Positions 1,649 through 59,968 of a stretch of DNA of 64,000 bases are shown piece by piece (the stretch's first letter is position 1; the number at the start of each line of letters is the position of its first letter). Position numbers and translations under genes: made by a program. The notes beneath the pieces were generated by a model. The model was not told the origin of the DNA and made no database searches. It worked only from the letters and a program-made list of their open reading frames with translations. Location: positions 175,961 to 239,960 of the IMG/VR virus record IMGVR_UViG_3300028045_000001. One strand, 5' to 3'.

Positions 1649-1684
1649 CATAAGTAGTTGAGGGAAGTCCCTCAACTACTTATG
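1649..1684. terminator. Perfect inverted repeat, 17-bp stem, 2-nt loop
   Basis: cataagtagttgaggga-ag-tccctcaactacttatg directly after the beta gene stop; terminator role is inferred. Confidence 0.65.
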
Positions 1685-1750
1685 TAACACGTGAATAGAA
1701 TTCGGCAATATGCCGTCCGGTACACTAACAATAAATTTCAATCACACTTT

Positions 1751-1763
1751 ATTTATATGTTAC
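1751..1763 (+). promoter_or_regulatory. Candidate early-type promoter variant (ATTTATATGTTAC)
   Basis: One mismatch to the ATTTATATATTAC motif found at 9606, 11101 and 49392; lies upstream of the beta' C-terminal gene. Confidence 0.4.
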
Positions 1764-1781
1764 ATGTATGGAATCTTGACT

Positions 1782-3923
1782 ATGGACATAACTAACGGGG
1801 TACACATGAAGATAACTTTAAAGAACATATCAAATCCGGATTTTGTGGATGAGCAATTAGAAAATGAACCAAGGGGAATGGCCACAATGGAACTAACTGA
1901 TGGCTCATTTGAGGTCCCTATTCGACGGGCATTATTGACAGCGCATCTAATGAAGCCGATGATCGGTAGAGTCCCTATAACAAGTGAATTTATTTATACT
2001 GAGGAAAAATTTAACACAAAGGGGATAACGAAATTATATAATAGAATAGCCGACGCATGGTCAGTTCGTTCACCAAGAAAATCCAAGGTGGAGAAGGAGC
2101 TGAGAGCGTTTCAAATAGATATTGCAATGAACATTGATGGACTCAACAACCTTGCACTTGAACATATGCAAGGGTACCAAGACTCATTTGACCTAGTGGA
2201 CATCTGCAGAATGATGGAACAGAAGCCGTTAAAAGAGCTGTGTGACAATTTAAAATTAGATAACAACGAGGGTACAAAAGTAGCAGAAAAGAAAATAGCA
2301 ATGGCTGGAAAAGAGCTCGGTCGTATACTTCGCGCAGGAACAGATGTGATCGATTTTAATCCACTGTATCCACACATAGAATATATTAATATGAATCAAT
2401 TAATACAAATATTAATATCATATGGTCCGAGGTCAGATATCGATGATAGTATGCTATCGCATGTTGTAAAAGGAAATGCATTGGACGGCCTAATGGATTT
2501 TGATGATTTCTATACCGAGGCACACTCAGCTAAAAAGTCAGCATGGGTATCTAAAGGAGCTATAAAGGAGGCACAGTATAATTCAAGAAAAGTTCAGTTG
2601 GCTTGTTTTGAATTAATACATATGGTAGCTGGAGATTGTAACACTACTGTCACAATCCAAATGATAATAGCGCCAGAAATAAAGCATAACTTTATAGGTA
2701 AGTTTGTAGATACTGGCGATAGCGGCCGAGGCATCCTATTGACAGAGGACAATATAGATGATTTTTTAAATAAGCCGATTAAGCTATACTCAGCATTCGG
2801 CTGTAAAGTAAAAAATGGAGTATGCGAGCACTGCTTCGGCAAAGCCGGTCAGGCTATTCAAAAAGCTATACATATTGGCATCCTATGCGCGAGCATAGTG
2901 CTTTCCGCTATAACTCAGAAAATACTATCAGCCAAGCATCTTGTGCGAACCGCATCTCAAATGTACAAACTTCCAAATGAATTGAAGTCTTTATTTATAA
3001 CCAATTACTCCAAGGAACAAGGAACCTATAAGTATACTGACGAAGAATTAAAAGAACAGATAACTGCATTCGCAAAAGTCGAGGGATCAGACGATGAGGA
3101 TGAGGACGGTATCGATGAGTTGGTCCGTGGTGAGATGGACGTAGACACCTATCGCTCTCTTATAGAGAACGAGGTGATCAATGACACTGAAGTATTTTGG
3201 AGGCCAGCACACGAGCGGTATCTACAAAGTGGACTAAAATTAATAATCCCTTTGGATGTGTTTAATGGAGTATTGTCCGACATCGCTTTGGATCCTGTGG
3301 CTAAATCATTCACAACTATACGAGAACTCGCTATACACAACGATTCCATGCGCTCCCCACTTCCACTAAAATTTATAGGCGACGACAAAGATAACTCAGT
3401 ATATTTTTCAAAGTATACATTGGAGTTTATACACGATAGGGTAACAAGAGAATTGGTTACCATACCTAATAATAAAGTCATCCATGTTCCTTTGGCTGGA
3501 TTCGATATAACAAAAGCATTCGTTATAAGTCCTACCATAAATATCGATGTTGTAAAATTTGTAGCACATGTTAATAGTTTCTTACAGTCTAAGCTTCCAA
3601 AATACACATCAGCGACAGAAGGGCTAACTGATTTCTTAAATCTAGTATACAGGGAATCCACAGTTCCTGTGTCTCATGTTGAGGTAGTGTTAAAAGCATT
3701 TACTATTACAAGCAGTGAGGATAAACGGATACCGGTAATAACGGATCCAAACAATATGGTGTTTGCTAACACAAATGATACCATTTCAAGAACTGCATCT
3801 GGGAAGATGTCATATGAGGATCTAAATAGATACTATGCACGTCCGGATACATATTTAGCTGAACCTGCAGTGGGCCTAGTGGATCCATTGTTCGGCTCAA
3901 TTGAACGCATTGTGGATAAATAA
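1782..3923 (+). CDS. rpoC: RNA polymerase beta' subunit, C-terminal part (probably non-virion RNAP, phiKZ gp74-like)
   Basis: GDCNT...CKVKNGVCEHCFG Zn-binding motif and trigger-loop-like ITQKILSAKH. No NADFDGD motif, consistent with a split beta'. Start more likely ATG 1782 or 1806 than 1710. Confidence 0.8.
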   Translation: MDITNGVHMKITLKNISNPDFVDEQLENEPRGMATMELTDGSFEVPIRRALLTAHLMKPMIGRVPITSEFIYTEEKFNTKGITKLYNRIADAWSVRSPRKSKVEKELRAFQIDIAMNIDGLNNLALEHMQGYQDSFDLVDICRMMEQKPLKELCDNLKLDNNEGTKVAEKKIAMAGKELGRILRAGTDVIDFNPLYPHIEYINMNQLIQILISYGPRSDIDDSMLSHVVKGNALDGLMDFDDFYTEAHSAKKSAWVSKGAIKEAQYNSRKVQLACFELIHMVAGDCNTTVTIQMIIAPEIKHNFIGKFVDTGDSGRGILLTEDNIDDFLNKPIKLYSAFGCKVKNGVCEHCFGKAGQAIQKAIHIGILCASIVLSAITQKILSAKHLVRTASQMYKLPNELKSLFITNYSKEQGTYKYTDEELKEQITAFAKVEGSDDEDEDGIDELVRGEMDVDTYRSLIENEVINDTEVFWRPAHERYLQSGLKLIIPLDVFNGVLSDIALDPVAKSFTTIRELAIHNDSMRSPLPLKFIGDDKDNSVYFSKYTLEFIHDRVTRELVTIPNNKVIHVPLAGFDITKAFVISPTINIDVVKFVAHVNSFLQSKLPKYTSATEGLTDFLNLVYRESTVPVSHVEVVLKAFTITSSEDKRIPVITDPNNMVFANTNDTISRTASGKMSYEDLNRYYARPDTYLAEPAVGLVDPLFGSIERIVDK

Positions 3924-3930
3924 GTAAGTT

Positions 3931-3960
3931 TGCTGGTAGGGGCACTGTCCCCTATCAACA
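3931..3960 (+). terminator. Imperfect stem-loop
   Basis: tgctggtagggg-cactgt-cccctatcaaca, with one G-U pair and one mismatch, after the beta' stop. Confidence 0.4.
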
Positions 3961-4028
3961 TCATTTATATTGGGCCTATCGAGTATTGGTAGGAAAGCAC
4001 ATATTCTTTTTAAATAAGAAGGTAACGT

Positions 4029-5540
4029 ATGTATAACAATAGTGATTATAAATTGTCGTTATTAAAACACTCCACGTATTTCACTATAGACTTTAATAAC
4101 GCACTTAGAGATAGACACCTTCGAATAAATAATATAATTAGGAGCTTTTTAAAGCAGGAACTAACGGCTCTAAAGTATCATGCAAGGTATAGGAGATGGA
4201 TACCTCAGTATATGTATTATTTAGTGACCTCAGATTGGTACAGGCTACCTATAGCTTACTTTCCAAAGCTTTGTAGAGCTTTGGACTCCAACCAGATAAA
4301 ATACGTTGCAACAGAAATGGCTCCAGTTGAACATAGTACAATGGGAGCATTGCCCGATTTGAGGTGGAGTCCCAGAGAGATACAACTTGTCCCGTTAGAT
4401 TTTTTAAGCGAGGGTAGTCGGCCGCAATCAGCGCTGTCCTTGGCTACAGGGAATGGTAAAACTTTTACAGCTATAAGAAGCGCATTGAACTTAAATCAGA
4501 CTACATTGATTCTTTGTACTGGATTAATAGAAGTTTGGTATAATTCAATACTGGCACAGACTAACTGTTCGAAAGATGATGTTTGGATCATGCAGGGATA
4601 TGCCACAGTGCATAGTTTAAATAGTATGGTAGACAATGGATACAAACCGAAATTCGTTATAGCCTCCATACCTACAGTGTATAACTTTATTCTAAGAAAA
4701 AACAAATATGAGTACATCGATTATACTTTTTCCGAGTTAGTAGAAAAGATAGGGTTCGGTACAAAAATAATCGACGAGTGTCATCAGCGATTAAGTCAAC
4801 TAGTGACGATTGATCTTGTCGCCAATATTAAAAATAACATTTATTTATCCGCAACCTATCTCGCCACAAATAAGATCATAAGTAGGATATTTAATACTAT
4901 CTTTAACAAAGCTATTAAACTTGTCGGAGCTGAGGGGATCAGACATTGCAATATAGAAAGATACACTTATCATGTTCTAGTGTCCGAGAGGAAATGTAAA
5001 ACTTCCCAGGGATATAATCATGCTAAGTATGAGCAATATATTCTCAAACGAAAAACTCTATGGGCGGCATTTGAGGAGTCCGTGTTACGTCCAATAGTAA
5101 TATCGAGATTCATCAGGGATAGGAGATCTTTCCATAGAGGATTAATATTTTGTAGTACCTTTGACATGGCGGACAGGATCATCGAATCTATAAGGAAAGC
5201 TTTTCCAGAGATTCGTGTAGCGAGATACTTTTCATCCAAGGGGGATAAGATAGATGATACGCTATATAACAAAGCTGTGGATCTATGTGTCACAACACCT
5301 GGATCATCTGGTACCGGGAAAGATATTCCCGATCTATGGTTCATATTGAACACTATTTCATTTTCTTCCGAACTAATGGCTATACAAATGATAGGTCGAC
5401 TGCGGCCATTGGATGGATTTGAAACTAGATTTATTGACATATCAAATGATTTTGTCGAATCCCACAAGAGGCATCTAAGAGATAGGAATTCCATATGGAA
5501 TTATCTTGGATTATCCTGTGTAGATTACAACATACCATAA
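4029..5540 (+). CDS. Superfamily 2 DExH helicase
   Basis: Walker A ATGNGKT, motif II IIDECHQ, motif V-like GTGKDIPDL, motif VI QMIGRLR. Follows the nvRNAP genes as phiKZ gp75 does. Confidence 0.9.
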   Translation: MYNNSDYKLSLLKHSTYFTIDFNNALRDRHLRINNIIRSFLKQELTALKYHARYRRWIPQYMYYLVTSDWYRLPIAYFPKLCRALDSNQIKYVATEMAPVEHSTMGALPDLRWSPREIQLVPLDFLSEGSRPQSALSLATGNGKTFTAIRSALNLNQTTLILCTGLIEVWYNSILAQTNCSKDDVWIMQGYATVHSLNSMVDNGYKPKFVIASIPTVYNFILRKNKYEYIDYTFSELVEKIGFGTKIIDECHQRLSQLVTIDLVANIKNNIYLSATYLATNKIISRIFNTIFNKAIKLVGAEGIRHCNIERYTYHVLVSERKCKTSQGYNHAKYEQYILKRKTLWAAFEESVLRPIVISRFIRDRRSFHRGLIFCSTFDMADRIIESIRKAFPEIRVARYFSSKGDKIDDTLYNKAVDLCVTTPGSSGTGKDIPDLWFILNTISFSSELMAIQMIGRLRPLDGFETRFIDISNDFVESHKRHLRDRNSIWNYLGLSCVDYNIP

Positions 5541-5548: not shown

Positions 5549-5578
5549 TTGGTATGGCATCCATGGATGCCATACCAA
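5549..5578. repeat. Perfect 30-bp palindrome, no spacer
   Basis: ttggtatggcatcca|tggatgccataccaa. Confidence 0.9.
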
Positions 5579-9536: not shown

Positions 9537-9572
9537 TATAACAGCAGGTGGGAAATCCCACCTGCTGTTATA
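9537..9572. terminator. Perfect inverted repeat, 17-bp stem, 2-nt loop
   Basis: tataacagcaggtggga-aa-tcccacctgctgttata. Confidence 0.65.
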
Positions 9573-10740: not shown

Positions 10741-10783
10741 GTGCCTAACAAGTACATAGCAATGCTATGTACTTGTTAGGCAC
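10741..10783. repeat. Perfect inverted repeat, 21-bp stem, 1-nt spacer
   Basis: gtgcctaacaagtacatagca-a-tgctatgtacttgttaggcac. Confidence 0.9.
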
Positions 10784-15274: not shown

Positions 15275-15784
15275 ATGTATATGTGCACAAAGGAATCAGT
15301 CGTATATGCAATGGCCCGTGGGGATGGAGCTTACGTGGCATGTAATCTTTTTGACTCGCACAATTGGGACATCAATGAGGGCATATTTATTGAGAGTATA
15401 GACAATGAGTTTGCTCCGATGCCATCTCTGTTGTATGGGATAATAAAGACCGGCAATAAAAGCATATTTTGTGTTGAGATACTCACTGCATCAAAGGTTG
15501 ACATTACGATACACATGTCTATAGACTCATGTTTAATTGATCTCTGTGGAGGTATAATAAAACCTATAAATGTATCTATTGGTAAACATGTGCTAACATT
15601 TAAAGGCACCGTTATTGAACCGGGCGTAATAACTAACATCACGCGGTCCGAGGCAACGATGACATATTGTTTAGATCTGCACTTGGGTGAGGATACCGAA
15701 GAATATGTATGTTATCCGGTGATAGATGGTGTAGTGGTCCCAGCATTTAATCATAGGGATGCATCCAGCAGGGTAGACTTTTAG
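15275..15784 (+). CDS. Stand-alone Hint/intein-like domain protein, paralogue 6
   Basis: MCTKESVV...SIDSCLI...VSIGKHVLT...ITNI...TYCLDL...VIDGVVVP. Start reassigned to ATG 15275, which removes the overlap with paralogue 5. Confidence 0.58.
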   Translation: MYMCTKESVVYAMARGDGAYVACNLFDSHNWDINEGIFIESIDNEFAPMPSLLYGIIKTGNKSIFCVEILTASKVDITIHMSIDSCLIDLCGGIIKPINVSIGKHVLTFKGTVIEPGVITNITRSEATMTYCLDLHLGEDTEEYVCYPVIDGVVVPAFNHRDASSRVDF

Positions 15785-15823
15785 CACTCCGATACTGTCC
15801 ACTGATGGACAGTATCGGAGTGC
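15784..15823. terminator. Bidirectional terminator-like inverted repeat, 18-bp stem, 4-nt loop
   Basis: gcactccgatactgtcca-ctga-tggacagtatcggagtgc between convergent genes; a T-run follows at about 15830. Confidence 0.75.
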
Positions 15824-24707: not shown

Positions 24708-24741
24708 ACCAGTTGCACTACAATACATCGGTGCAACTGGT
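24708..24741 (+). terminator. Stem-loop, 11-bp stem, 12-nt loop
   Basis: accagttgcac-N12-gtgcaactggt. Confidence 0.45.
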
Positions 24742-27291: not shown

Positions 27292-27323
27292 TTATAGTCT
27301 GCCCTACGTAGGGCAGACTATAA
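27292..27323. repeat. Perfect 32-bp palindrome, no spacer
   Basis: ttatagtctgccctac|gtagggcagactataa. Confidence 0.9.
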
Positions 27324-32081: not shown

Positions 32082-32118
32082 TACCTTGGCCTTGCCTACT
32101 ATAGGCAAGGCCAAGGTA
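32082..32118. terminator. Perfect inverted repeat, 17-bp stem, 3-nt loop
   Basis: taccttggccttgccta-cta-taggcaaggccaaggta. Confidence 0.65.
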
Positions 32119-40111: not shown

Positions 40112-40145
40112 ATGAGGAAGTTCTCCTGTAGGAGAACTTCCTCAT
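40112..40145. terminator. Perfect inverted repeat, 16-bp stem, 2-nt loop
   Basis: atgaggaagttctcct-gt-aggagaacttcctcat. Confidence 0.65.
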
Positions 40146-42962: not shown

Positions 42963-42996
42963 CATATGTCCCTTCTCATATGAGAAGGGACATATG
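42963..42996. repeat. Perfect 34-bp palindrome, no spacer
   Basis: catatgtcccttctcat|atgagaagggacatatg. Confidence 0.9.
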
Positions 42997-44710: not shown

Positions 44711-44752
44711 TTCTATGGCCCACTCCTTTTATAAAAGGAGTGGGCCATAGAA
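44711..44752. repeat. Perfect 42-bp palindrome, no spacer
   Basis: ttctatggcccactcctttta|taaaaggagtgggccatagaa. Confidence 0.9.
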
Positions 44753-48572: not shown

Positions 48573-48589
48573 AAGGGATAGAAAATATC

Positions 48590-49391: not shown

Positions 49392-49404
49392 ATTTATATA
49401 TTAC
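49392..49404 (+). promoter_or_regulatory. Candidate early promoter ATTTATATATTAC
   Basis: Exact copy of the motif, at the switch from structural to accessory genes. Confidence 0.6.
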
Positions 49405-49472
49405 TATTATAGCTATAAGAATAAATGCATCTTTTATACACATTAAAGACTTCGAGTCAAAGGAGTGCAACT

Positions 49473-51849: not shown

Positions 51850-51857
51850 GAGGTTAC

Positions 51858-52718
51858 ATGAGCGACATACTTTGTTTTTATCACAAAGACTTGGATGGCA
51901 TATGTGCGGCCTCCATAGTCAAACATAAATTTCCAGATTGTGAATGTATCGGATTAACATACGAAAAGGATCTCCCAAACCTCCCAGAAAAAGGCAAGAC
52001 AATCTATATAGTTGACTACACGTTCCCGGTTGATTATATGCATCAATTAAATGAAGACCATATAGTGCACTGGATAGATCACCATCACAATGCCATATCG
52101 GAGGTTAAAAGTTCTGGGTTTAAGGCATCTGGATCTGAAACGTTAGATCCATCTTATAGTGGAGCCGCACTAACTTGGATGCACTTTAACCGTCATATAA
52201 AACTTCCACGATTTATCGAATTAGTTAGTAACTGGGACCTATGGAAACACGATGATCCAGAATGTGTATATTTTCATTACGGTATTTTTTGTAATGCGGA
52301 CACAAGTCCAGGTGCTGAAGTGTGGAATAAATTAAATAATGCCGCCCACCTATCTTTGGTATCAGAAACCATCATACGTGAAATTGTCGAGTGTGGTAAA
52401 AAAGCACGGTCATACCAAGGTATAATTGATAAAGACCACGTACAAAGATTTGCATACGTTGTTGATTTCGAAGGACATAAGGCATTGGTCGCCAATTACC
52501 ACAGGGGGACCTCAGAAATATTTGACTCTATAATAGAGGAAGATAAATACAGGTGCGACGTTATGATAATTTATAGCCATAGGAAGAATGGATACAAGTA
52601 TTCAATACGATCCAACGACGATACTGTGGACGTTGCACTCATCGCAAAAAAGTATGGGGGTAACGGACATAGGGCATCCGCTGGCTTCTGGCACGACACC
52701 CTATTGTGGGAGACATAG
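51858..52718 (+). CDS. DHH-family phosphoesterase (with DHHA1-like C-terminus)
   Basis: YHKDLDG, IVDY, WIDHH and C-terminal YGGNGHRASAG. Confidence 0.88.
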   Translation: MSDILCFYHKDLDGICAASIVKHKFPDCECIGLTYEKDLPNLPEKGKTIYIVDYTFPVDYMHQLNEDHIVHWIDHHHNAISEVKSSGFKASGSETLDPSYSGAALTWMHFNRHIKLPRFIELVSNWDLWKHDDPECVYFHYGIFCNADTSPGAEVWNKLNNAAHLSLVSETIIREIVECGKKARSYQGIIDKDHVQRFAYVVDFEGHKALVANYHRGTSEIFDSIIEEDKYRCDVMIIYSHRKNGYKYSIRSNDDTVDVALIAKKYGGNGHRASAGFWHDTLLWET

Positions 52719-52722
52719 GACC

Positions 52723-52764
52723 ACACTTAGACGCTGATAGGATGTCCTATCAGCGTCTAAGTGT
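52723..52764. terminator. Perfect inverted repeat, 20-bp stem, 2-nt loop
   Basis: acacttagacgctgatagga-tg-tcctatcagcgtctaagtgt. Confidence 0.65.
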
Positions 52765-52782
52765 AATATAATTATAAAGGAG

Positions 52783-54027
52783 ATGAAAATGTATCTTGAG
52801 GGCTGGATAAGAAAAACCATATGTAAACAAAAATATTATGAAAGTATCGATGAGGAAGATGGTTCACTGTTACTAACTCCTTACGTGGTAGTGAATAGGT
52901 ATGTGAGAGAAGGAGTTACTGACAAGAAAGGCGATGTCATACACGGAGAGTGGATACCTGCAGATCATCCCAAAGTACCAGATCAAATTTGTGACGTACC
53001 TGAGGAGCGAATCAATTGCACCATAGCCGAAGTATCTATTATGTTAAAGTATAACCTTAGACCTGACGAGCCAAGTCCGACCTATCGTATATTTCGTCGA
53101 GATAACTCGCATATCGGGGTAGCATGTCCATCATTGCCAGGTTACTTTGATAGTGAGATAACTTGGCTACGAACAATACAACTCAATATGGTGGATAGTC
53201 ATGTTGTACAAAAATGCATGATCAGTGGACTAACTATAGATCGAGTGGGTGACCCACAAATGGATAGGATGTGTAAACTATATGAAGGTAAGGTATACGT
53301 CTACTTTAATCCAAGTGCCAAAGAACCGGATGAATATTGGAAATTAGAGTACTGCGTTCCGATGAAGGTAACTTCGGGACAGTATTACGGCGATAACCCA
53401 AGCGGCGATATCATTAATAGGATTGATGGCATAGATAATTACATTCACAAAAAGACATCAATAATTGATCAGATACTGCGCAGTAATAATAAATTTACTG
53501 CAATAAAGGATAAGGTAGTTGGATTTATATATGGTGGAAGAGGATACCACTCTCCTTCTATTAATGCGGATGGACCAGATTTTGTATCTGGAAAAGCAAT
53601 AGATGGCGTGGGGCTATTCCTTCCAAGTGGAAATGCCTCAGGGCGATTCTCCGTTGATTTGCACAAGCATCGCATAAGCCTCATGTATGAACACACACTG
53701 TATGCTGTCAGGGATAAGCTATATTTAAATGGCTGCAGAGTTGGGGGCGATCACATGGGTTTAAATAACATGACGATCAATGAGCTTGAGCTCTCCCTTA
53801 GAACTTATCTTTCTAAGGGTAGAAGTGCGGATGCTTTAGTGGCATGCCTAATAAATAAATCTTTGCCAGACGTAAGATGTATCGAGGTAATTAAATCGCC
53901 AGCTGTACAAATGGCCCCGGCCCCCAGGCAGTATTATGTAAATGATGTACGCATAGATATATTGGAAGAAAGGGACAGGACAGATGGCTTCAAAAAAGAA
54001 TTAGCTTTTATACAGAATGGAGATTAA
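52783..54027 (+). CDS. Hypothetical protein, paralogue of 54475-55869
   Basis: Shares WI.K..C.Q.Y.E, WIPA.H..VP, EYWK, VTSG.Y.G.N, VGFIY.GRGY and VRDK.YLNG with the second copy. Confidence 0.7.
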   Translation: MKMYLEGWIRKTICKQKYYESIDEEDGSLLLTPYVVVNRYVREGVTDKKGDVIHGEWIPADHPKVPDQICDVPEERINCTIAEVSIMLKYNLRPDEPSPTYRIFRRDNSHIGVACPSLPGYFDSEITWLRTIQLNMVDSHVVQKCMISGLTIDRVGDPQMDRMCKLYEGKVYVYFNPSAKEPDEYWKLEYCVPMKVTSGQYYGDNPSGDIINRIDGIDNYIHKKTSIIDQILRSNNKFTAIKDKVVGFIYGGRGYHSPSINADGPDFVSGKAIDGVGLFLPSGNASGRFSVDLHKHRISLMYEHTLYAVRDKLYLNGCRVGGDHMGLNNMTINELELSLRTYLSKGRSADALVACLINKSLPDVRCIEVIKSPAVQMAPAPRQYYVNDVRIDILEERDRTDGFKKELAFIQNGD

Positions 54028-54438
54028 ATGAAATTCATTGATCAAATGGTTTTTGAAAAAGGAAAGGGTGACTGTGTAAGAGCTTGTTTGGCCTCAATTT
54101 TAGAATTTCCAATCAAAGACATGCCAAATTTTTGGGAAGTAGCGTATAATGTAGAGGAATTTTGGAAATTAGTAAATACATGGATATCAGACAATTATAA
54201 CTATAATTGTCTGATAACTAAAAATTTACCTACTTTAGAATGTAAAGATATCCTATGCATCGCCATCGGCTCTCCTGCTCATTGTGATGGAAAAGAATGC
54301 GAAGAAGTGCATGCAGTTATTTGGTTTGAGGGAAAGGTAATATTTGATCCACATCCTAATAGAGCTGGTCTAAGTAAAATAAACTCATTCCTTTTTCTAA
54401 TACCTACAATTAATCGATTCAAAGATCCAACTGCCTAA
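54028..54438 (+). CDS. Putative papain-fold (C39-like) cysteine peptidase
   Basis: GDCVRACLASIL, VHAVIW and FDPHP give a candidate Cys-His-Asp triad. Confidence 0.55.
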   Translation: MKFIDQMVFEKGKGDCVRACLASILEFPIKDMPNFWEVAYNVEEFWKLVNTWISDNYNYNCLITKNLPTLECKDILCIAIGSPAHCDGKECEEVHAVIWFEGKVIFDPHPNRAGLSKINSFLFLIPTINRFKDPTA

Positions 54439-54474
54439 CAAATTAAATTATCAAACTTTTTAAGGATGAATTAA

Positions 54475-55869
54475 ATGGAACTAACAACTCAAATTAGCGA
54501 TAATGATGACCATATGATAACTGATTGTTGGATACATAAATTCGTATGTCAACAACAATACCACGAGGCAGTAACTGTGGATTGGGAACTGATGCTATCT
54601 CCATATGTAAAAGTGAAACAGTATATGCGGAGAGTGTCGATTGTAGACGGTGACCTTAAGAGCACTGCCTGGATTCCCGCAAACCATGATGATGTTCCAC
54701 CTGCACATAGAGCGGCCGATGAACGGATAATTCATTGTGATATAGAAGACATTTCAATTCTATTGAATACTGATATTGTGACCAAAAAGAGATCGAGTAT
54801 ATTTATAAACAAGCCGAATAAAGATCCTATAACCAATGAATACCGAAACGGTACTCATTCAAAGATACCAGGCTATATCAATACGGGAATAGATGGATTG
54901 TGGTCATTTCAACTTACCATCGAGCAGAGATGCAACATCGGTCGTTTCCATAAAAGACCATCGCAGTTAAGTATCGATACTACATATAAGCTACAGGAAG
55001 GTCAAATAGAGATTTATTTTGATCCTAACATGGAAGATACGCTTGAGTATTGGAAAACTCTCTATAACGATGCGATGCCAGTAACTTCTGGAGTGTACAA
55101 CGGGGGGAATTTAAGTAATTACGTTTTTAATGAGATAGGAGGCATCGAAGGATATCTAACTATTAAATATTTAATAACAGATTCGTTTACTTCATGCAAA
55201 CATGGAGACGAAGAGATTGTTGGATTTATATATGAGGGTAGAGGATATAACCTACGATCTTTTTCTGCTAGCTCTGGTAGGATTGGTGGAGAGTTGATTG
55301 ATAAGACAGTCTTTTTTGATACCAATGATGAATTAGATGATGTCGTTATAGACATATATAAAAGCTACATTAAATTGATGCGCAAGAATATATTGTATAT
55401 TGTAAGAGACAAGGTATACTTGAATGGGGACCCTATAGAAGTAATAAATCCAGAAATGTTTGTTAGTGAATTTAGAGAATCACTTAAAAAATACATTACA
55501 ATGGATTGTGGCATTGGTCCATTAACCACATGCTATATAAACATAATGCTTCCAGAAGTATTGTATATTCAGATGGGCACTGAAACGGTGGACGTCTATG
55601 AGAGAAAAAATAGATGCAATCAATTTAAAGAAGAGATCCCTTTTATACTTGATTGTCCTAGAACAAGAGTTGGGGATATAGGAAACGGCCCATTTCAATT
55701 TGAAAATCATGAGAATACCGACACCGTATCAAAGCAAGTATTAGACGACATGAAACATGGTTATGAAATGCTTCTGATGGATACGGAAGTGTGTCAACCT
55801 AAGGAAGTCGATGTGCCCGCTGATGTAGGTTATGAAATAAAACTTGAGGATGATCCGGAGTTTGAATAA
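54475..55869 (+). CDS. Hypothetical protein, paralogue of 52783-54027
   Basis: Shared motifs listed for the first copy. Confidence 0.7.
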   Translation: MELTTQISDNDDHMITDCWIHKFVCQQQYHEAVTVDWELMLSPYVKVKQYMRRVSIVDGDLKSTAWIPANHDDVPPAHRAADERIIHCDIEDISILLNTDIVTKKRSSIFINKPNKDPITNEYRNGTHSKIPGYINTGIDGLWSFQLTIEQRCNIGRFHKRPSQLSIDTTYKLQEGQIEIYFDPNMEDTLEYWKTLYNDAMPVTSGVYNGGNLSNYVFNEIGGIEGYLTIKYLITDSFTSCKHGDEEIVGFIYEGRGYNLRSFSASSGRIGGELIDKTVFFDTNDELDDVVIDIYKSYIKLMRKNILYIVRDKVYLNGDPIEVINPEMFVSEFRESLKKYITMDCGIGPLTTCYINIMLPEVLYIQMGTETVDVYERKNRCNQFKEEIPFILDCPRTRVGDIGNGPFQFENHENTDTVSKQVLDDMKHGYEMLLMDTEVCQPKEVDVPADVGYEIKLEDDPEFE

Positions 55870-55893
55870 CTAAATGATAGAAGGGAGTTTAAA

Positions 55894-56295
55894 ATGGCAG
55901 AAACAGAGTGTGATATTAGATTTGGACCGTATCTAATTGATATTATCAATGGGTATTGTTCGATACGACGAGAAGATGGTGCGCCAGTTGAACCCACCTT
56001 TTTTGAAATGCAGTACATAAAGGATACTGTGTTTGGTGTGGATGCTATAGGAATTGAAATATTCCCTGCCACAGGTAAAGCCTTCAATTTTACAGAAGTG
56101 ACTTCCGAGCCACCTAAACGATATTTGTGGAGGATGGGAATAGATGCTATCGATGAAACAGTTGGTGCATTTACGTCATATACAGGAGATGAAGAGGCGG
56201 AGCTACAACGTGAGGAGGATGCTAAAAAGCATGCCTCCGATGACGTAGTATGTATGTCCACTTACTACAAGCGCAATAAATTAGGGAATAAATAG
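55894..56295 (+). CDS. Conserved-type phage hypothetical protein
   Basis: PTFFEMQYIKDTVFG....IEIFP...YLW pattern, recalled from small phage proteins. Confidence 0.5.
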   Translation: MAETECDIRFGPYLIDIINGYCSIRREDGAPVEPTFFEMQYIKDTVFGVDAIGIEIFPATGKAFNFTEVTSEPPKRYLWRMGIDAIDETVGAFTSYTGDEEAELQREEDAKKHASDDVVCMSTYYKRNKLGNK

Positions 56296-56299
56296 GGGT

Positions 56300-56890
56300 A
56301 TGTCAAATAGAGGGAGAATCACTATGTTTGAATCTAAATTCAAAGCAATGCGACACGTTGAAACTGTAAGAAATTTTATTTCTACTGTAATTAAAGAATT
56401 ACTTAATCGACAGGAACTCCACGATCAAACAAAACTCCAATCCCCTGAAGCTGAGATATTCGCGGAGCACACACCGAAGTTAAGGGATAGCGCTTACGCT
56501 TCTGAGGAATATAATGAGTGTCTAAAGGAAATGAATGTCGCATTGGAACATCATTACAAGAACAGCCGACATCATCCAGAGCATTTCGGTCACATGCGAT
56601 GTGCCGCTTGTATGGACACATACACTATTGATCCGGATGCTCATTGTGTCGATTGTAGTAGGAACGGTATTCCGAAACACAGTATACTTTCAATGAACCT
56701 AATTGATATGATCGAGATGTTATGCGATTGGAAGGCAGCTACATTACGTCATGACACTGGTGACCTATATCAAAGTATCGAATTGAATCAAAAACGTTTT
56801 GGGTATGGGAATGAAATAAAGAAACTATTGATCAACACTGCTAAATGGCTGGATGAGCAGGATACCTTCCACCATGCAAAAGAAAGTTGA
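56300..56890 (+). CDS. HD-like protein (DUF5662-type) with Zn-ribbon insertion
   Basis: HDQTKL, HHY..SRHHPEHF, IEMLCDW.AA; inserted CAAC-x11-CVDC. Confidence 0.6.
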   Translation: MSNRGRITMFESKFKAMRHVETVRNFISTVIKELLNRQELHDQTKLQSPEAEIFAEHTPKLRDSAYASEEYNECLKEMNVALEHHYKNSRHHPEHFGHMRCAACMDTYTIDPDAHCVDCSRNGIPKHSILSMNLIDMIEMLCDWKAATLRHDTGDLYQSIELNQKRFGYGNEIKKLLINTAKWLDEQDTFHHAKES

Positions 56891-56929
56891 TACTACTATA
56901 ACAATACTACCATAGCTTTGGAGAATTAA

Positions 56930-57403
56930 ATGGAGTTTATAGATATATGCCGTACTTACGACTACGCAATGTATGATTCGCATATTTGTGAAATGCGAGA
57001 CGCCATGGAAGTGGAGATGCTCGACCACATACCTGAGAACTTACATGCGTTTTATAAAGAAGTTTACTCATACGTTCCAAAGTCAATCCATGACTTTTCA
57101 ATGACAATATTCCATGATCCACACAGAAGGTTTTTTATACTGAAGAACGACAATGTGATCGTAGGATACATATACCTCATGCTACATGAGCCAGTCATAC
57201 ATATAGAGGAGATATATATTTATAGGAAATACCGGGGCAAGCAGATAGGACCTGCCGTTATACAAAAATTAAGCGACAGTATGAAGGATTTTACTTCGAT
57301 TAATTTAAATGTAATAGTTGCTAACAGTGCAGCTTTAAGCATGTATATAAAGTTGGGGTTTAGCATGCATACGATGACTATGTATAAGAAAATAAATCAA
57401 TAA
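56930..57403 (+). CDS. GNAT-family N-acetyltransferase
   Basis: Acetyl-CoA motif A IYIYRKYRGKQIG; motif B LNV...NSAALSMYIKLGF. Confidence 0.85.
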   Translation: MEFIDICRTYDYAMYDSHICEMRDAMEVEMLDHIPENLHAFYKEVYSYVPKSIHDFSMTIFHDPHRRFFILKNDNVIVGYIYLMLHEPVIHIEEIYIYRKYRGKQIGPAVIQKLSDSMKDFTSINLNVIVANSAALSMYIKLGFSMHTMTMYKKINQ

Positions 57404-57414
57404 TTTATTATTTC

Positions 57415-57442
57415 TACGGATGGTTCATATGAACCATCCGTA
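57415..57442. repeat. Perfect 28-bp palindrome, no spacer
   Basis: tacggatggttcat|atgaaccatccgta. Confidence 0.9.
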
Positions 57443-57482
57443 CTATAAATTTAATTAAAATAAAGGGGGCTAATAAAAAAAA

Positions 57483-58214
57483 ATGGAAGTTGGATACCCA
57501 CATAAAAACTCTATTATTTACATTGCAGATATTGGAGATGATATAGATGATCAAATTGCTGTTGAATATCTTCATCTGTCTGGTTGCTTAAATGGCGTTG
57601 TTTTAGATGGTACAAAGAGCTCTAATCAAATAGAATCACGAATAAAATTTTTAAAAGATAGGGGGGTGCAATTTTACGACACTGTCCCACTTGGAACAGA
57701 AATTATATTTTGTGGTGGAAGACTAACTAAAGTGGCAAGGTACATTGAAGATGGAGGACATTTGGAATTTCTTTGTATGAATGGAGGATTTGCTGGTAAA
57801 AATTGTGTAGCAAAAAAACATATACTTGAAAAATTTAAAAAGCACACTACAGTAAGAACTTACAATTTTAACATGGACGTGTCCGCTGCAATGAATGTGA
57901 TAGATTCACTACATATAGATTCTATTCTTTTAGTTAGTAAAAATATATGCCACCACAAAAAGAATACTTTTCCAAACTTACATAAAGAATTATTTCTTGA
58001 AAAATATAAATTACGGGAAACAAAGTGTTTACATGACTTATTGGCTGTAAAAGAAGGCATGGCGTTTTTAAACAAACAACATATGCTATGCCAATATTTA
58101 CCAGTTAAAGTTTACAATAAGTATAACGAAAAAAATGAAACCATGACTGAATGGGGGGCACACTTTAATCCAAATTCACATGTATTAATATCTGTCGGTT
58201 GGGAAATAAAATAA
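57483..58214 (+). CDS. Nucleoside hydrolase-like protein (IU-NH fold)
   Basis: IADIGDDIDDQIA (D-x-D-x-x-x-DD), MNGG, YNFNMDVSAA and LHDLLA. Confidence 0.7.
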   Translation: MEVGYPHKNSIIYIADIGDDIDDQIAVEYLHLSGCLNGVVLDGTKSSNQIESRIKFLKDRGVQFYDTVPLGTEIIFCGGRLTKVARYIEDGGHLEFLCMNGGFAGKNCVAKKHILEKFKKHTTVRTYNFNMDVSAAMNVIDSLHIDSILLVSKNICHHKKNTFPNLHKELFLEKYKLRETKCLHDLLAVKEGMAFLNKQHMLCQYLPVKVYNKYNEKNETMTEWGAHFNPNSHVLISVGWEIK

Positions 58215-58395
58215 TTTAAATATTTAATAAAAGGTATAAATTTGATATGTTTAAACTGATTAAAAAGATTTCATTGGCCAGTATCCTTATTCTACAAATG
58301 AATCTATTATAGAAGAACTTAAAAAGGAATATACATTAGGTAACGAAGATAGTGTCATACATTAATGTAGAATTATTTAAAGGAAAATATTTAAG

Positions 58396-58788
58396 ATGAG
58401 CAATGAATTGCCATATGATCCAAAATTAAAAGAAGCAATGGCCGAAATAAAAGTGATTCTAAAGAAACACGATATTGCGGGAGCGGTTTCGTTGGTATCT
58501 GAAACACATTCAGAATATCTCTATGACTTTCCATCATGGTCTGGCATTAAACTTACTGGCGACGGATTAAAAATGGATATAAAACATAAAGATTTTAAAG
58601 CTAAAGCAGATTTCAATGAAGCCGCCACTATAGCGATGCACGTACTTCATCAAATAAGGGATATAGGTGGTAAATCATTTATGATATTCGAAAAGGTCAT
58701 AAATACGATAATTGAAAAAACCGGTATAGAAGTGGAGCATGAGCCATTTCACAATTCTACCCACATAGAAACAATTAAAGTAAAATAA
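58396..58788 (+). CDS. Hypothetical protein
   Basis: 130-aa ORF with AAGGA RBS. Confidence 0.6.
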   Translation: MSNELPYDPKLKEAMAEIKVILKKHDIAGAVSLVSETHSEYLYDFPSWSGIKLTGDGLKMDIKHKDFKAKADFNEAATIAMHVLHQIRDIGGKSFMIFEKVINTIIEKTGIEVEHEPFHNSTHIETIKVK

Positions 58789-58795
58789 ACTTTTA

Positions 58796-58829
58796 TGTAA
58801 CATGTTGGTGCGTACACCAACATGTTACA
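58796..58829. terminator. Perfect inverted repeat, 15-bp stem, 4-nt loop
   Basis: tgtaacatgttggtg-cgta-caccaacatgttaca, followed by a T-rich run. Confidence 0.7.
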
Positions 58830-58913
58830 GCCAAGCCTTTATTTTTTTTTATCATTTAATAATGGATAATTACATTGACGACCATCTGATCAAAAATTAG
58901 GGAGATAGAGTAG

Positions 58914-59903
58914 ATGAAAAAGTTACTTAGCTTGGCTGGAATCGAGGATGCGAGACTTACTGCCGATTCATATATTGAGCGCGAGAAGCAATTCTCTGAC
59001 CTACATGACATTCTAGTTATAACGATTGCCTTGAAAGAGAATATAGAAACGCATGGCTTCACCAAACAGATTGCAGAGTATGTACAAACAATAGGTGGCG
59101 ACACATTCTTTACTGATGCCACTGTCTCACTCCAAGGCTTTCTCGATGGAACTGATGACCAGCATGAGGTGTCAGAAATAGCAATGAATGGGATATCTAG
59201 TGCTATAGCTTCCGCTATAAAAAAAATTAAAGGGATTATAAAAAAGGCAGTCGATAAATTAAAAGCCCTATTTAAAGAAGTGGATGGCGCTACACTAGAC
59301 CTAAATGAGTTCCTTAAAAATAATGCAGTTCTTCTAACTGATAAAGTTGATTGGGACTCCATTAAGGATAAAAGGATCCCTGGGCCGCGCATTATAAAAT
59401 TAAAGCCACTGATGAAATCACTCACATCTTTTTCTAAATGGGATATTCTTGAATTAACCAATCTTCTTGACATAAGTAGAATCACCACATTACAAGATAT
59501 ACCGAACACTGCCTCCATATCAAAAGATATGTATATAGTGTGTACAGATGATCTCAGGGATATCAAGAATATGCAAAATATCGAAAAGGATCTCCTAAAA
59601 ATGCCCAATATCACAACACTAAAGGTAAAGGATAACATCAAAGAATTGTATGACACAGTCGTTGTATTATTAAAGCATGTGTCGAAACTATTCGAGAGTC
59701 GGGACGAACTGTTTGCTGCCTTGAATTCATTTATAGTGGACCTACAGAATTTGCCAGATGCCGAGTTTAATAAACGGATTCAACATTCGAGCATATCGGA
59801 GGCTTGGTTCATATCAACCATCTTCGAGGTGATGCTTGAATCAAAGAATGTTTTTCTAAGGGCTAGTTACAAGGTGTTTGATACCGTACACGAAGGTATA
59901 TGA
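58914..59903 (+). CDS. Putative internal head/ejection protein (phiKZ-type propeptide architecture)
   Basis: Acidic helical N-terminus, VSLQG...IAMNG, then an amphipathic basic helix AIKKIKGIIKKAVDKL. Confidence 0.55.
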   Translation: MKKLLSLAGIEDARLTADSYIEREKQFSDLHDILVITIALKENIETHGFTKQIAEYVQTIGGDTFFTDATVSLQGFLDGTDDQHEVSEIAMNGISSAIASAIKKIKGIIKKAVDKLKALFKEVDGATLDLNEFLKNNAVLLTDKVDWDSIKDKRIPGPRIIKLKPLMKSLTSFSKWDILELTNLLDISRITTLQDIPNTASISKDMYIVCTDDLRDIKNMQNIEKDLLKMPNITTLKVKDNIKELYDTVVVLLKHVSKLFESRDELFAALNSFIVDLQNLPDAEFNKRIQHSSISEAWFISTIFEVMLESKNVFLRASYKVFDTVHEGI

Positions 59904-59928
59904 TCTTATAAAGGTAGCTGTAACGCGT

Positions 59929-59968
59929 AGGTGGCTCTGGGTACCACATGTGGTACCCAGAGCCACCT
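59929..59968. repeat. Perfect 40-bp palindrome, no spacer
   Basis: aggtggctctgggtaccaca|tgtggtacccagagccacct. Confidence 0.9.

What the first reader, a model, noticed from the sequence alone, without database searches (positions are those of the whole stretch)
1649..59968. Fourteen perfect, sequence-unrelated intergenic palindromes, six with no spacer
Seen in sequence: stems of 14-21 bp with 0-4-nt spacers at 1649, 5549, 9537, 10741, 15784, 27292, 32082, 40112, 42963, 44711, 52723, 57415, 58796 and 59929. All are strictly Watson-Crick, share no sequence, and most lack a U-tract. Established knowledge: ordinary intrinsic terminators have shorter stems, real loops, frequent G-U pairs and U-tails. 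Inference: selection on DNA symmetry (cruciform or ssDNA hairpin), a phage-RNAP-specific pause/termination signal, or dsRNA processing sites.
Basis: partly seen in the sequence, partly recalled or inferred. Interest (0 to 1): 0.6.

Follow-up and report, generated by a model that had tools for sequence, protein, structure and literature searches.

The report
Perfect-palindrome transcript-end hairpins, jumbo phage
The fourteen perfect palindromes are real and belong to about ninety such elements that sit just after genes in a 240-kb phiKZ-like jumbo phage, most likely marking where its transcripts end; their flawless symmetry is best explained by DNA copying errors (template switching) that keep the two arms identical, as shown here in related phages.

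Summary
Observation confirmed. All 14 palindromes are at the stated coordinates: perfect Watson-Crick, 14-21 bp arms, 0-4 nt spacers, six with none, none expected by chance. They share no sequence, and most lack an adjacent U-tract.

The window is the last 64 kb of a 239,960-bp jumbo phage with phiKZ-type split RNA polymerase genes. Genome-wide there are about 81 such palindromes plus 8-10 large-loop hairpins. Only 3 of about 90 are imperfect.

They start 2-40 nt after stop codons. They occupy 57% of convergent, 27% of tandem and 13% of divergent gene junctions. Many lie just upstream of promoter-like motifs. They are most likely transcript 3'-end hairpins, as experimentally mapped in phiKZ and 201phi2-1, but in a different form: long, sequence-diverse, often loopless, with no conserved tail.

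Near-exclusive perfection is shared by other phiKZ-like phages (RSF1, PCH45, AhC3_1, RP31). In the RSF1 clade, all 44 variable stem columns are compensated, and half involve transversions. Loops are often exact reverse complements. These are the signatures of replication template switching plus purifying selection. The 25 loopless centres here (P~1e-15) fit the same process.

No close relatives or reads were available, so termination and the mechanism in this genome are inferred. Verdict: a new variant of a known kind, of moderate interest.

The parts
1649..1684 (.). Perfect palindrome, 17-bp arms, 2-nt spacer. It lies 4 nt after the stop of the ORF ending at 1645 and 26 nt before the RNAP-beta-like gene starting at 1710.
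   Evidence: RNA dG -25.3 kcal/mol
5549..5578 (.). Perfect palindrome, 15-bp arms, no spacer (centre CCATGG). It lies 9 nt after the helicase-like ORF (4029-5540) and is followed at +1 by an ATTATATA-like motif.
   Evidence: dG -20.3 kcal/mol
9537..9572 (.). Perfect palindrome, 17-bp arms, 2-nt spacer. It lies 9 nt after ORF 7636-9528 and is followed 38 nt later by the early-promoter-like TATATTAC motif.
   Evidence: dG -28.2 kcal/mol
10741..10783 (.). Perfect palindrome, 21-bp arms, 1-nt spacer, 14 nt after ORF 10290-10727.
   Evidence: dG -32.9 kcal/mol
15784..15823 (.). Perfect palindrome, 18-bp arms, 4-nt spacer, at a convergent junction. It abuts the stop of ORF 15167-15784 (+) and lies 17 nt from the end of the RNAP-beta-like gene 15840-17534 (-). 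A T8 run starts 7 nt downstream.
   Evidence: dG -33.6 kcal/mol
24708..24741 (.). Additional hairpin not in the finding: 11-bp perfect stem with a 12-nt loop, in the 70-nt gap between the 2086-aa tail-fibre-like gene (ends 24700) and the next gene (starts 24771). RNAfold extends it by two pairs, one of them a G.U.
27292..27323 (.). Perfect palindrome, 16-bp arms, no spacer (centre TACGTA). It lies 2 nt after the virion-protein ORF 25434-27290 and 76 nt before the RNAP beta gene starting at 27399. An ATTATATA-like motif lies 16 nt downstream.
   Evidence: dG -21.9 kcal/mol
32082..32118 (.). Perfect palindrome, 17-bp arms, 3-nt spacer, 27 nt after ORF 31570-32055.
   Evidence: dG -30.7 kcal/mol
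40112..40145 (.). Perfect palindrome, 16-bp arms, 2-nt spacer, 40 nt after the 1697-aa ORF (ends 40072). An ATTATATA-like motif lies 17 nt downstream, and the next gene starts at 40212.
   Evidence: dG -24.6 kcal/mol
42963..42996 (.). Perfect palindrome, 17-bp arms, no spacer (centre CATATG), 13 nt after the tail-protein ORF 40212-42950. An ATTATATA-like motif lies 3 nt downstream. It is one of the few that pass the loose T-rich-tail test.
   Evidence: dG -24.7 kcal/mol
44711..44752 (.). Perfect palindrome, 21-bp arms, no spacer (centre TTATAA), 19 nt after ORF 43910-44692. An ATTATATA-like motif lies 11 nt downstream.
   Evidence: dG -33.4 kcal/mol
52723..52764 (.). Perfect palindrome, 20-bp arms, 2-nt spacer. 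It lies 5 nt after ORF 51858-52718 and 19 nt before the next gene (52783).
   Evidence: dG -33.1 kcal/mol
54185..54216 (.). A 15th perfect palindrome (15-bp arms, 2-nt spacer), not in the finding. It lies inside ORF 54028-54438, has 22% GC and is the weakest fold. It is probably not a member of the class.
   Evidence: dG -15.2 kcal/mol
57415..57442 (.). Perfect palindrome, 14-bp arms, no spacer (centre CATATG). It lies 12 nt after ORF 56930-57403 and 41 nt before the next gene (57483).
   Evidence: dG -19.0 kcal/mol
58796..58829 (.). Perfect palindrome, 15-bp arms, 4-nt spacer, 8 nt after ORF 58396-58788. A T-run starts about 12 nt downstream.
   Evidence: dG -21.8 kcal/mol
59929..59968 (.). 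Perfect palindrome, 20-bp arms, no spacer (centre ACATGT), 26 nt after ORF 58914-59903. The likely ATG of the next gene is near 60008, so the element is intergenic.
   Evidence: dG -36.8 kcal/mol

Best explanation
The palindromes are the transcript 3'-end signals of a phiKZ-like jumbo phage that transcribes its genome with its own multisubunit RNA polymerases. When transcribed, each folds into a very stable, perfectly paired RNA hairpin of 12-21 bp; loopless ones open a 4-nt loop. In the window dG is -19 to -37 kcal/mol. The hairpin forms a few nucleotides after a stop codon and usually just before the next promoter-like motif. It ends or attenuates transcription, and it protects the 3' end from exonucleases. 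In this way it delimits transcription units.

The flawless, sequence-unrelated symmetry is not itself the signal. It is a by-product of how such hairpins evolve in this phage lineage. During DNA replication the polymerase occasionally switches template between the two arms. That copies one arm onto the other, fixing any mismatch in one step, and inverts the spacer. When the switch crosses the dyad, it erases the spacer altogether. Purifying selection then removes the mismatched intermediates.

Shown: the existence, statistics and placement of the elements, and the evolutionary pattern in related phages. Inferred: that transcripts end here, and that template switching acts in this particular genome.
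For: - Identity of the genome: three phiKZ-type RNAP beta/beta' gene fragments lie in the window. The genome is a 239,960-bp phage record with terminal repeats. Sigma70-like promoters are not enriched.
- Shared promoter core: the TATATTAC core of a long, strand-specific promoter-like motif is shared with phiKZ's own repeated motif.
- Placement: about 85% are intergenic and start 2-40 nt after the upstream stop. They occupy 13 of 23 convergent, 49 of 181 tandem and 3 of 23 divergent junctions.
- Promoter coupling: 9 of 14 window elements are followed within 50 nt by a promoter-like motif. Repeated promoter cassettes begin immediately after unrelated palindromes.
- Density: about 37 per 100 kb, close to the mapped terminators of phiKZ (133 in 280 kb) and 201phi2-1 (132 in about 317 kb) (PMC10914365, PMC11512511).
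- Stability: median dG is -24.7 kcal/mol. At dG <= -20 kcal/mol, 78 of 95 strong intergenic hairpin loci are these palindromes.
- Clade trait: perfect:imperfect counts are 21:2 in RSF1, 13:0 in PCH45, 25:0 in AhC3_1, 49:5 in RP31 (at score >=10) and 80:1 here.
- RSF1 clade (RNAP gene 86% identical): 17 loci, 221 stem columns, 44 variable, all compensated. 23 involve transversions, including C-G/G-C and A-T/T-A flips that have no G.U intermediate. 5 of 16 loci with loops contain exact reverse-complement loop pairs. A loopless centre changes CGCG to CTAG and stays palindromic.
- RP31 vs RP12 (1.6% flank divergence): two exact loop inversions.
- Known mechanism: arm homogenisation and spacer inversion are the published signatures of template switching (PMC8794818, PMC8604942).
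- In this genome: 26 of 58 even-centred elements have self-complementary centres (P~1e-15). Two 76%-identical paralogous genes each carry an unrelated perfect palindrome 3-5 nt after the stop.
Against: - No transcript data exist for this phage, so termination is inferred from position and analogy.
- Most elements lack the U-tract that multisubunit RNAPs normally need for intrinsic termination. They also lack the TTAT tail of phiKZ terminators.
- Unlike the RSF1 clade, the loops show no GNRA or UUCG preference (1 of 9 four-nt loops), so direct evidence of selection at the RNA level is weaker here.
- No close relative exists and reads were unavailable. Template switching therefore could not be demonstrated in this genome itself.
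- In RP31/RP12 the inversion rate (2 of 54 hairpins at 1.6% divergence) looks too low for template switching alone to erase mismatches, so strong selection against even G.U pairs is still needed. A purely RNA-stability model does not easily explain that.
- Only 27% of tandem junctions carry an element.
Confidence: 0.6

Rival explanations
1. RNA processing or stability sites rather than terminators. RNAP reads through, and the perfect duplex is then recognised by a double-strand-specific RNase (host RNase III or an unrecognised phage enzyme) or simply blocks 3'-5' exonucleases. This would define mature 3' ends as in the mimivirus 'hairpin rule'.
For: Sequence-unrelated palindromes after genes are the defining feature of the mimivirus hairpin rule, where a viral RNase III-like enzyme cleaves them (PMC4402537). 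The absence of a U-tract fits processing better than intrinsic termination. Perfect, bulge-free duplexes of 14-21 bp are good dsRNA substrates (established knowledge). Placement is the same as for the best explanation.
Against: No RNase III domain is detectable in the phage genome. Most stems are shorter than the roughly 20-22 bp favoured by bacterial RNase III (established knowledge). In relatives whose ends were mapped, hairpin sites behave as termination sites with reduced read-through, and eight tested 201phi2-1 terminators showed termination activity in a terminator-trap assay (PMC10914365, PMC11512511). Processing does not explain the self-complementary centres.
Confidence: 0.2
2. The symmetry is selected at the DNA level. 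The palindromes extrude as cruciforms or form hairpins in single-stranded DNA. In that form they act as roadblocks, as structure-specific protein-binding sites, or as replication, recombination or packaging signals.
For: Symmetry extends through the centre far beyond chance (26 of 58, P~1e-15). There is no tetraloop preference, no arm-composition asymmetry relative to transcription direction, and almost no G.T pairs. Centres are rich in flexible pyrimidine-purine steps such as CATG and CATATG.
Against: Placement is polar with respect to genes: tightly after stop codons, enriched at convergent junctions and depleted at divergent ones. A pure DNA-structure role does not predict that. The sequences share nothing, so a sequence-specific dimeric binder is excluded. 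In the RSF1 clade the homologous class carries GNRA and UUCG loops, which argues for function in RNA. Loopless centres are also the expected footprint of template switches that cross the dyad (PMC8794818), so selection on DNA shape is not needed.
Confidence: 0.12
3. Plain host-RNAP bidirectional intrinsic terminators whose perfection is incidental.
For: Long gapless hairpins in T4 and RaK2 are also mostly perfect (24 of 30). A subset here has T-runs 3-12 nt downstream. 13 elements sit at convergent junctions.
Against: Canonical tails are missing in most, and upstream A-tracts are absent (1 of 53). Stems of 14 bp or more are 7-20 times denser than in T4, RaK2 or phiKZ. The genome carries its own RNAP sets and shows no sigma70-promoter enrichment. 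Perfection differs significantly from T4 plus RaK2 (P=0.0015).
Confidence: 0.05
4. Assembly or library fold-back artefacts, chance, or copies of a mobile palindromic element (REP/MITE-like).
For: Reads could not be inspected.
Against: None are expected by chance. The elements are short, internal and positioned after stop codons. The same class occurs in independently sequenced cultured phages. They share no more sequence than shuffled palindromes, so they are not a repeat family.
Confidence: 0.02

Closest known systems
Hairpin terminators of phiKZ and 201phi2-1, mapped by ONT-cappable-seq (PMC10914365, PMC11512511)
   Same: Both are jumbo phages with their own split multisubunit RNAPs. Both have roughly one hairpin per 2-3 kb, placed after genes and at convergent junctions. 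Stems are essentially perfect, and there is no classical long U-tract.
   Different: phiKZ terminators share one conserved sequence: an 8-bp C/G-rich stem, a real loop and a TTAT tail. Here stems are 14-22 bp and unrelated in sequence, 31% are loopless, and no tail motif is conserved. Stems of 14 bp or more are about 11 times denser (25.4 against 2.3 per 100 kb).
Intergenic hairpins of Ralstonia/Burkholderia phages RSF1, FLC4-5C, FLC8 and SURPRISE13, of RP12/RP31, and of Aeromonas phage AhC3_1 and Serratia phage PCH45 (analysed here)
   Same: They are sequence-diverse perfect stems, AT/YR-rich at the base and GC-rich at the top, with no adjacent U-tract. Perfection is near-exclusive.
   Different: Their stems are shorter (11-16 bp). 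Loops are mostly stable GNRA or UUCG tetraloops or their complements. Loopless elements are rare (0-13%). Density of long stems is 2-10 times lower.
Mimivirus 'hairpin rule' (PMC4402537)
   Same: Sequence-unrelated palindromes in short 3' intergenic regions define transcript ends, in a large virus that carries its own transcription machinery.
   Different: That system is in a eukaryotic giant virus, is coupled to polyadenylation, and uses a viral RNase III-like enzyme. No RNase III gene is detectable here, and only about a third of gene junctions carry an element.
Template-switch creation and maintenance of hairpins (PMC8794818, PMC8604942)
   Same: Perfect stems, multi-base and transversion-type compensatory changes, and exact loop inversion. 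All were seen here in the phiKZ-like relatives.
   Different: The mechanism was described for rRNA, microRNA and yeast inverted repeats. My paper searches turned up no application to phage terminators. In this genome only indirect footprints are available: loopless centres, and palindromes that have turned over downstream of paralogous genes.
PeSL composite promoter-terminator cassettes of T4-like phages (PMC2839356, PMC4122927)
   Same: A stem-loop lies directly upstream of a conserved early promoter in intergenic regions, and the promoter cassettes are repeated.
   Different: In PeSLs the whole motif is conserved. Here only the promoter part is conserved, and the repeated cassette begins just after an unrelated palindrome.
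Canonical Rho-independent terminators
   Same: A stable hairpin shortly after a stop codon.
   Different: Stems are far longer, there are no bulges or G.U pairs, and most lack the U-tract.

Membership tests
Canonical intrinsic (Rho-independent) terminator | Stable RNA hairpin at the end of a transcription unit | tested here: met
   In the window dG is -19 to -37 kcal/mol. The elements lie 2-40 nt after stop codons.
Canonical intrinsic (Rho-independent) terminator | U-tract directly (0-2 nt) after the stem | tested here: not met
   Only 1 of 7 palindromes in window 40050-60040 passes on the sense strand. Genome-wide, 10 of 53 have a T-run of 4 or more within 12 nt.
Canonical intrinsic (Rho-independent) terminator | RNAP release at the site | not testable with these tools
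phiKZ-type phage terminators (Putzeys et al. 2024) | Hairpins after genes in a phage with its own multisubunit RNAPs, at about 40-50 per 100 kb | tested here: met
   RNAP genes are present. Density is about 37 per 100 kb, and placement is by junction type.
phiKZ-type phage terminators (Putzeys et al. 2024) | Conserved motif BCCYCCCC-loop-GGGRRGG followed by TTAT | tested here: not met
   The palindromes share no sequence, and the downstream flank has no conserved positions. The phiKZ motif is seen in phiKZ itself.
Mimivirus hairpin rule | Sequence-unrelated palindromes in 3' intergenic regions | tested here: met
   Coverage is partial: 27% of tandem and 57% of convergent junctions.
Mimivirus hairpin rule | Virus-encoded RNase III-like enzyme that cleaves the hairpin | tested here: not met
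   No PF00636 match in the 240-kb genome, while the controls gave matches.
Mimivirus hairpin rule | Polyadenylation at the hairpin | not testable with these tools
   No RNA data.
Template-switch-maintained hairpins | Arm homogenisation: changes always compensated, including transversion flips | tested here: inconclusive
   Met in relatives: 44 of 44 variable columns are compensated, and 23 involve transversions. In this genome only indirect evidence exists: 80:1 perfect and unrelated perfect palindromes after 76%-identical paralogs. No orthologues are available.
Template-switch-maintained hairpins | Exact inversion of the spacer between close relatives | tested here: inconclusive
   Met in relatives: 5 of 16 loci in the RSF1 clade and 2 events between RP31 and RP12. 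Not testable in this genome. The excess of loopless centres is compatible with it.
REP/MITE-like repeated palindromic elements | Shared consensus sequence among copies | tested here: not met
   7 pairs have a longest common substring of 9 or more, against 6.2 in shuffled palindromes.
PeSL promoter-terminator cassettes | Conserved composite motif of stem-loop plus early promoter | tested here: not met
   The promoter part is conserved and repeated, but the stem-loop is not part of the repeat.
N4-type DNA-hairpin promoters (recalled from memory: 5-7 bp stem, 3-nt loop, conserved sequence, upstream of early genes) | Short conserved hairpins at the 5' ends of genes | tested here: not met
   Stems are 14-22 bp, there is no shared sequence, and the elements are attached to gene 3' ends and rare at divergent junctions.

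The most novel reading that the evidence does not exclude
This phage lineage may use a U-tract-independent 'hairpin rule' for 3'-end formation by its own RNA polymerases, convergent with that of mimiviruses. In that reading the strict two-fold DNA symmetry, including the loopless centres and the exclusion of G.U pairs, is itself selected. Possible reasons are that the element must work identically on both strands as a bidirectional insulator, or that it acts as an extruded DNA structure. Template switching would then be the mechanism that supplies symmetric variants rather than the whole explanation.
Probability: 0.2. Interest if true: 0.75.

Novelty: new variant of a known kind. Interest (0 to 1): 0.5.

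Why it matters
- If these palindromes end transcripts, they show that phage-encoded multisubunit RNAPs can use a terminator design with no conserved sequence and no U-tract. This is a phage counterpart of the mimivirus hairpin rule, and a source of very strong, compact and possibly bidirectional insulators for synthetic biology.
- The comparative result may be of wider interest. Across several phiKZ-like clades, terminator hairpins evolve by strictly compensated changes and loop flips. That is among the clearest natural examples of template switching creating and maintaining functional hairpins. It also gives a simple genomic read-out of template-switch activity in phage replication.
- For annotation, the palindromes are reliable markers of transcription-unit boundaries in an otherwise orphan genome.

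Tried and rejected
- **Close relatives, for an orthologous-site test in this genome: none found.** megablast and tblastn against cultured phages gave at most 31% aa identity. IMG/VR and JGI metagenome scans with the RNAP beta protein returned only the genome itself. The large protein search gave a best hit of 31% on a 271-kb contig whose DNA could not be retrieved. A scan of viral contigs for the 18-nt promoter motif gave only chance single hits.
- **Reads:** Neither population variation nor an assembly artefact could be checked with reads.
- **Phage-nucleus markers:** phiKZ chimallin and PhuZ used as queries gave no match in the genome. This is inconclusive, so no claim of nucleus formation is made.
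- **Phage-encoded RNase III:** none found.
- **Rfam:** no family in the window.
- **First energy-based scan:** the threshold of -14 kcal/mol was too lax and picked up background folding. It was re-filtered at -20 kcal/mol.
- **AhC3_1 relatives:** too divergent for intergenic orthology, at 67% nt identity or less. RP12/RP31 were used instead.
- **Random AT-rich viral loci as a baseline:** 61:53 perfect to imperfect. I judged this baseline too favourable and replaced it with T4 and RaK2, which lowered the significance of 'perfection' to P=0.0015.
- The count was recomputed from the stored files.
- **Byrne et al. 2009, the original hairpin-rule paper:** not held. PMC4402537 was used instead.
- **Rejected readings:** mobile repeat family, sequence-specific dimer-binding sites (no consensus), and N4-like hairpin promoters (wrong end of the genes).

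Full report
**1.

A complete scan of the window for perfect inverted repeats returns every one of the 14 listed elements at the stated coordinates. Arms are 14-21 bp and spacers 0-4 nt, and six have no spacer. In second-order Markov shuffles of the window, stems of 14 bp or more never occur. Stems of 10 bp or more average 1.15, against 15 observed, and no real stems of 10-13 bp occur at all, so this is a discrete class. All 14 are intergenic.

The scan adds a 15th perfect palindrome at 54185-54216. It lies inside a plausible ORF, has 22% GC and folds weakly (dG -15 kcal/mol), so it is probably unrelated. A later scan that allowed larger loops adds a hairpin at 24708-24741, with an 11-bp perfect stem and a 12-nt loop, in the gap after the 2086-aa gene.

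**2. What the genome is**

The window is the last 64 kb of a 239,960-bp viral record with direct terminal repeats (contig Ga0233414_10000002). It encodes three phiKZ-type split RNA polymerase beta/beta' genes (1710-3923, 15840-17534 on the minus strand, 27399-31496). It also encodes virion, tail, helicase and thymidylate-synthase-like proteins.

Its RNAP beta is at most 31% identical to anything in cultured phages or in the large protein collection. No close relative exists in IMG/VR or JGI metagenomes. phiKZ chimallin and PhuZ find nothing, which is inconclusive, so I call the phage phiKZ-like by its polymerases only.

Sigma70-like promoters are not enriched (68 against 73 expected). A long, strand-specific promoter-like motif with the core TATATTAC occurs 39 times on the plus strand. 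The same core sits in phiKZ's own repeated AT-rich upstream motif (16 on the plus strand against 6.7 expected).

**3. The class is genome-wide**

- *Census.* The whole genome has 81 perfect palindromes with arms of 11-22 bp and spacers of 0-10 nt, against one with a mismatch and none with a G.T. A further 8-10 intergenic hairpins have 12-23-nt loops. In all, 3 of about 90 are imperfect (T:C, T.G, A:C).
- *Energy check.* A scan that can see bulges and G.U pairs finds that, at dG <= -20 kcal/mol, 78 of 95 strong intergenic hairpin loci are these palindromes.
- *Sequence relatedness.* They share no more sequence than shuffled palindromes.
- *Placement.* About 85% are intergenic and begin 2-40 nt after the upstream stop codon. 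They occupy 13 of 23 convergent, 49 of 181 tandem and 3 of 23 divergent junctions.
- *Flanks.* Arms show no compositional asymmetry relative to transcription. Only 10 of 53 oriented elements have a T-run of 4 or more within 12 nt. T-runs further downstream (22 of 53 within 25 nt, against 3 mirror-image A-runs) largely belong to the promoter-like motif that follows.
- *Promoter coupling.* In the window, 9 of 14 are followed within 50 nt by a promoter-like motif, then a ribosome-binding site and ATG. Repeated promoter/5'-UTR cassettes (90-92% identical) begin immediately after palindromes that are unrelated to each other.

**4. What is unusual, and what is not**

The same scanner was run on other genomes:

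| Genome | Perfect : imperfect (score >= 11) | Stems >= 14 bp per 100 kb |
|---|---|---|
| This phage | 80:1 | 25.4 |
| RSF1 | 21:2 | 9 |
| PCH45 | 13:0 | 2 |
| AhC3_1 | 25:0 | 11 |
| phiKZ (130 kb) | 11:2 | 2.3 |
| T4 | 4:1 | 1.2 |
| RaK2 | 20:5 | 3.7 |

Perfection among long gapless hairpins is therefore partly a property of the detection method. It is also a general trait of phiKZ-like phages. This genome still differs from T4 plus RaK2 (P=0.0015).

The truly distinctive features are length, density and the centres. 25 of 81 elements are loopless, against 0-13% elsewhere. 26 of 58 even-centred elements have a self-complementary 4-nt centre, against 6.8% expected (P~1e-15). Loops show no GNRA or UUCG preference.

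A standard terminator scan accepts only 2 of 7 palindromes in 40050-60040, and only 1 on the sense strand. No Rfam family matches.

**5. Known comparators**

- ONT-cappable-seq mapped 133 termination sites in phiKZ and 132 in 201phi2-1. Most intrinsic ones share one conserved short hairpin followed by TTAT (PMC10914365, PMC11512511). I see that motif in phiKZ DNA.
- Density and placement here match those maps. Sequence conservation and the tail do not.
- The mimivirus hairpin rule uses sequence-unrelated palindromes to define 3' ends, with a viral RNase III-like enzyme (PMC4402537). This phage has no RNase III domain.
- PeSL cassettes of T4-like phages couple a stem-loop to an early promoter (PMC2839356, PMC4122927). 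Here only the promoter part is conserved.

**6. How the perfection is maintained: a test in relatives**

No orthologues of this genome exist, so I tested the element class in two other phiKZ-like clades.

*RSF1 clade.* RSF1 was compared with SURPRISE13, FLC4-5C and FLC8. Their RNAP gene is 86% identical.
- Of 23 orthologous hairpin loci (88 instances), 79 instances are perfect.
- Counting each variable column once: 17 loci and 221 stem columns, of which 44 vary. All 44 are compensated. 23 involve a transversion, including 6 C-G/G-C and 7 A-T/T-A flips that cannot pass through a G.U intermediate.
- In 5 of 16 loci with loops, the loops of different phages are exact reverse complements (GTGA/TCAC, GCAA/TTGC, TTTC/GAAA).
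- A loopless centre changes from CGCG to CTAG and stays palindromic.
- The one RSF1 hairpin with classical A5/T5 tracts is also the one that keeps two G.T pairs in three genomes.

*RP31 vs RP12.* Flanks are 1.6% diverged. Of 54 hairpins, 42 are identical. Two differ by exact loop inversion. About five carry single uncompensated changes (G.T or mismatch). Stems change about 2-3 times more slowly than flanks.

Arm homogenisation and spacer inversion are the published signatures of replication template switching, which can create a perfect stem or repair a pair in one event (PMC8794818, PMC8604942). The short-timescale data show that mismatched states arise and are removed, so purifying selection acts as well.

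**7. Applying this to the window**

The loopless centres are what a template switch that crosses the dyad would leave. Two paralogous genes, 76% identical up to their stop codons, each carry a perfect palindrome 3-5 nt after the stop, and those two palindromes share no sequence. Position is conserved, sequence has turned over, and perfection is kept.

I therefore read the 14 elements as transcript 3'-end hairpins. Most likely they are terminators or attenuators for the phage polymerases, and they also protect 3' ends. Their symmetry is largely a mutational by-product that selection keeps.

Processing by a double-strand RNase remains possible, as does a role of the DNA structure itself. The exclusion of even G.U pairs and the lack of tetraloops keep the DNA-level reading alive at low probability. 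Chance, artefact, a mobile repeat family, dimer-binding sites and N4-type hairpin promoters are rejected.

**8. Limits**

- No RNA data were available.
- Gene calls are my own longest-ORF heuristic, so junction counts are approximate.
- Template switching is demonstrated in relatives, not in this genome.
- The original hairpin-rule paper was not available.
- The properties of N4 promoters and of RNase III substrates are cited from general knowledge.

**9. Verdict**

This is a new variant (long, loopless, motif-free) of a known kind (hairpin terminators of phiKZ-like jumbo phages), with a documented evolutionary mechanism behind its most striking property. Interest is moderate.

Noticed in passing
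window 9611, 11106, 49397 (intergenic) and 14129, 29687 (inside ORFs); genome-wide 39 on the + strand and 11 on the - strand: A long, strand-specific promoter-like motif (T-run, then TTATATATTAC, then TATnATGA). Its TATATTAC core is also the core of phiKZ's own repeated AT-rich upstream motif (16 on the + strand against 6.7 expected), even though the RNAPs are only about 30% identical. It is probably the virion-RNAP early promoter.
   Followed up: partly
window 5550, 10754, 27339, 32165, 40162, 42999, 44763, 52766 (approximate starts): A second promoter-like motif (ATTATATA-like) lies 1-47 nt downstream of 8 of the 14 palindromes, ahead of virion and tail genes. It may be the middle or late promoter class.
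   Followed up: partly
genome (G000:C1) 144584-144700, 170956-171044, 171608-171718; and 158206-158315, 159193-159303: Promoter/5'-UTR cassettes of about 110 nt, 90-92% identical, repeated upstream of different genes. Each begins right after a different, unrelated palindrome.
   Followed up: partly
genome 9.2-10.3 kb, 20.7-21.4 kb, 63.2-63.7 kb, 149.5-151.4 kb, 153.1-153.7 kb: A family of genes built from roughly 75-nt (25-aa) tandem repeats. Their proteins are about 40-50% identical to repeats on a giant-virus MAG contig (L041).
   Followed up: no
window 34979-40072, 40212-42950, 44805-46664, 47664-48572: Four large neighbouring proteins all match the same PHROG of unknown function (phrog_10758). 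This suggests a shared module in a set of tail or fibre-like proteins.
   Followed up: no
window 54185-54216: A perfect 15-bp-arm palindrome inside ORF 54028-54438. It is AT-rich and weak, unlike the intergenic class.
   Followed up: partly
genome 56064-56088: A (TA)12 microsatellite in an intergenic region.
   Followed up: no
RSF1 record NC_028899.1, 27456-27495 (within L076): The only RSF1 hairpin flanked by classical A5 and T5 tracts is also the only one that keeps two G.T pairs, unchanged in three genomes. It looks like a host-type bidirectional terminator among the phage-type ones.
   Followed up: partly
FLC4-5C vs FLC8 (L098-L110); RP31 vs RP12 (L135-L154): Very closely related cultured phages differ at several hairpins only by exact reverse-complementation of the 4-nt loop. 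This points to frequent inversion events in these genomes.
   Followed up: yes
Vibrio phage vB_VpaM_sm033, first 100 kb (L070-L074): This phiKZ-like phage has no hairpins scoring 11 or more, so the long perfect-hairpin trait is not universal among phages with split RNAPs.
   Followed up: no
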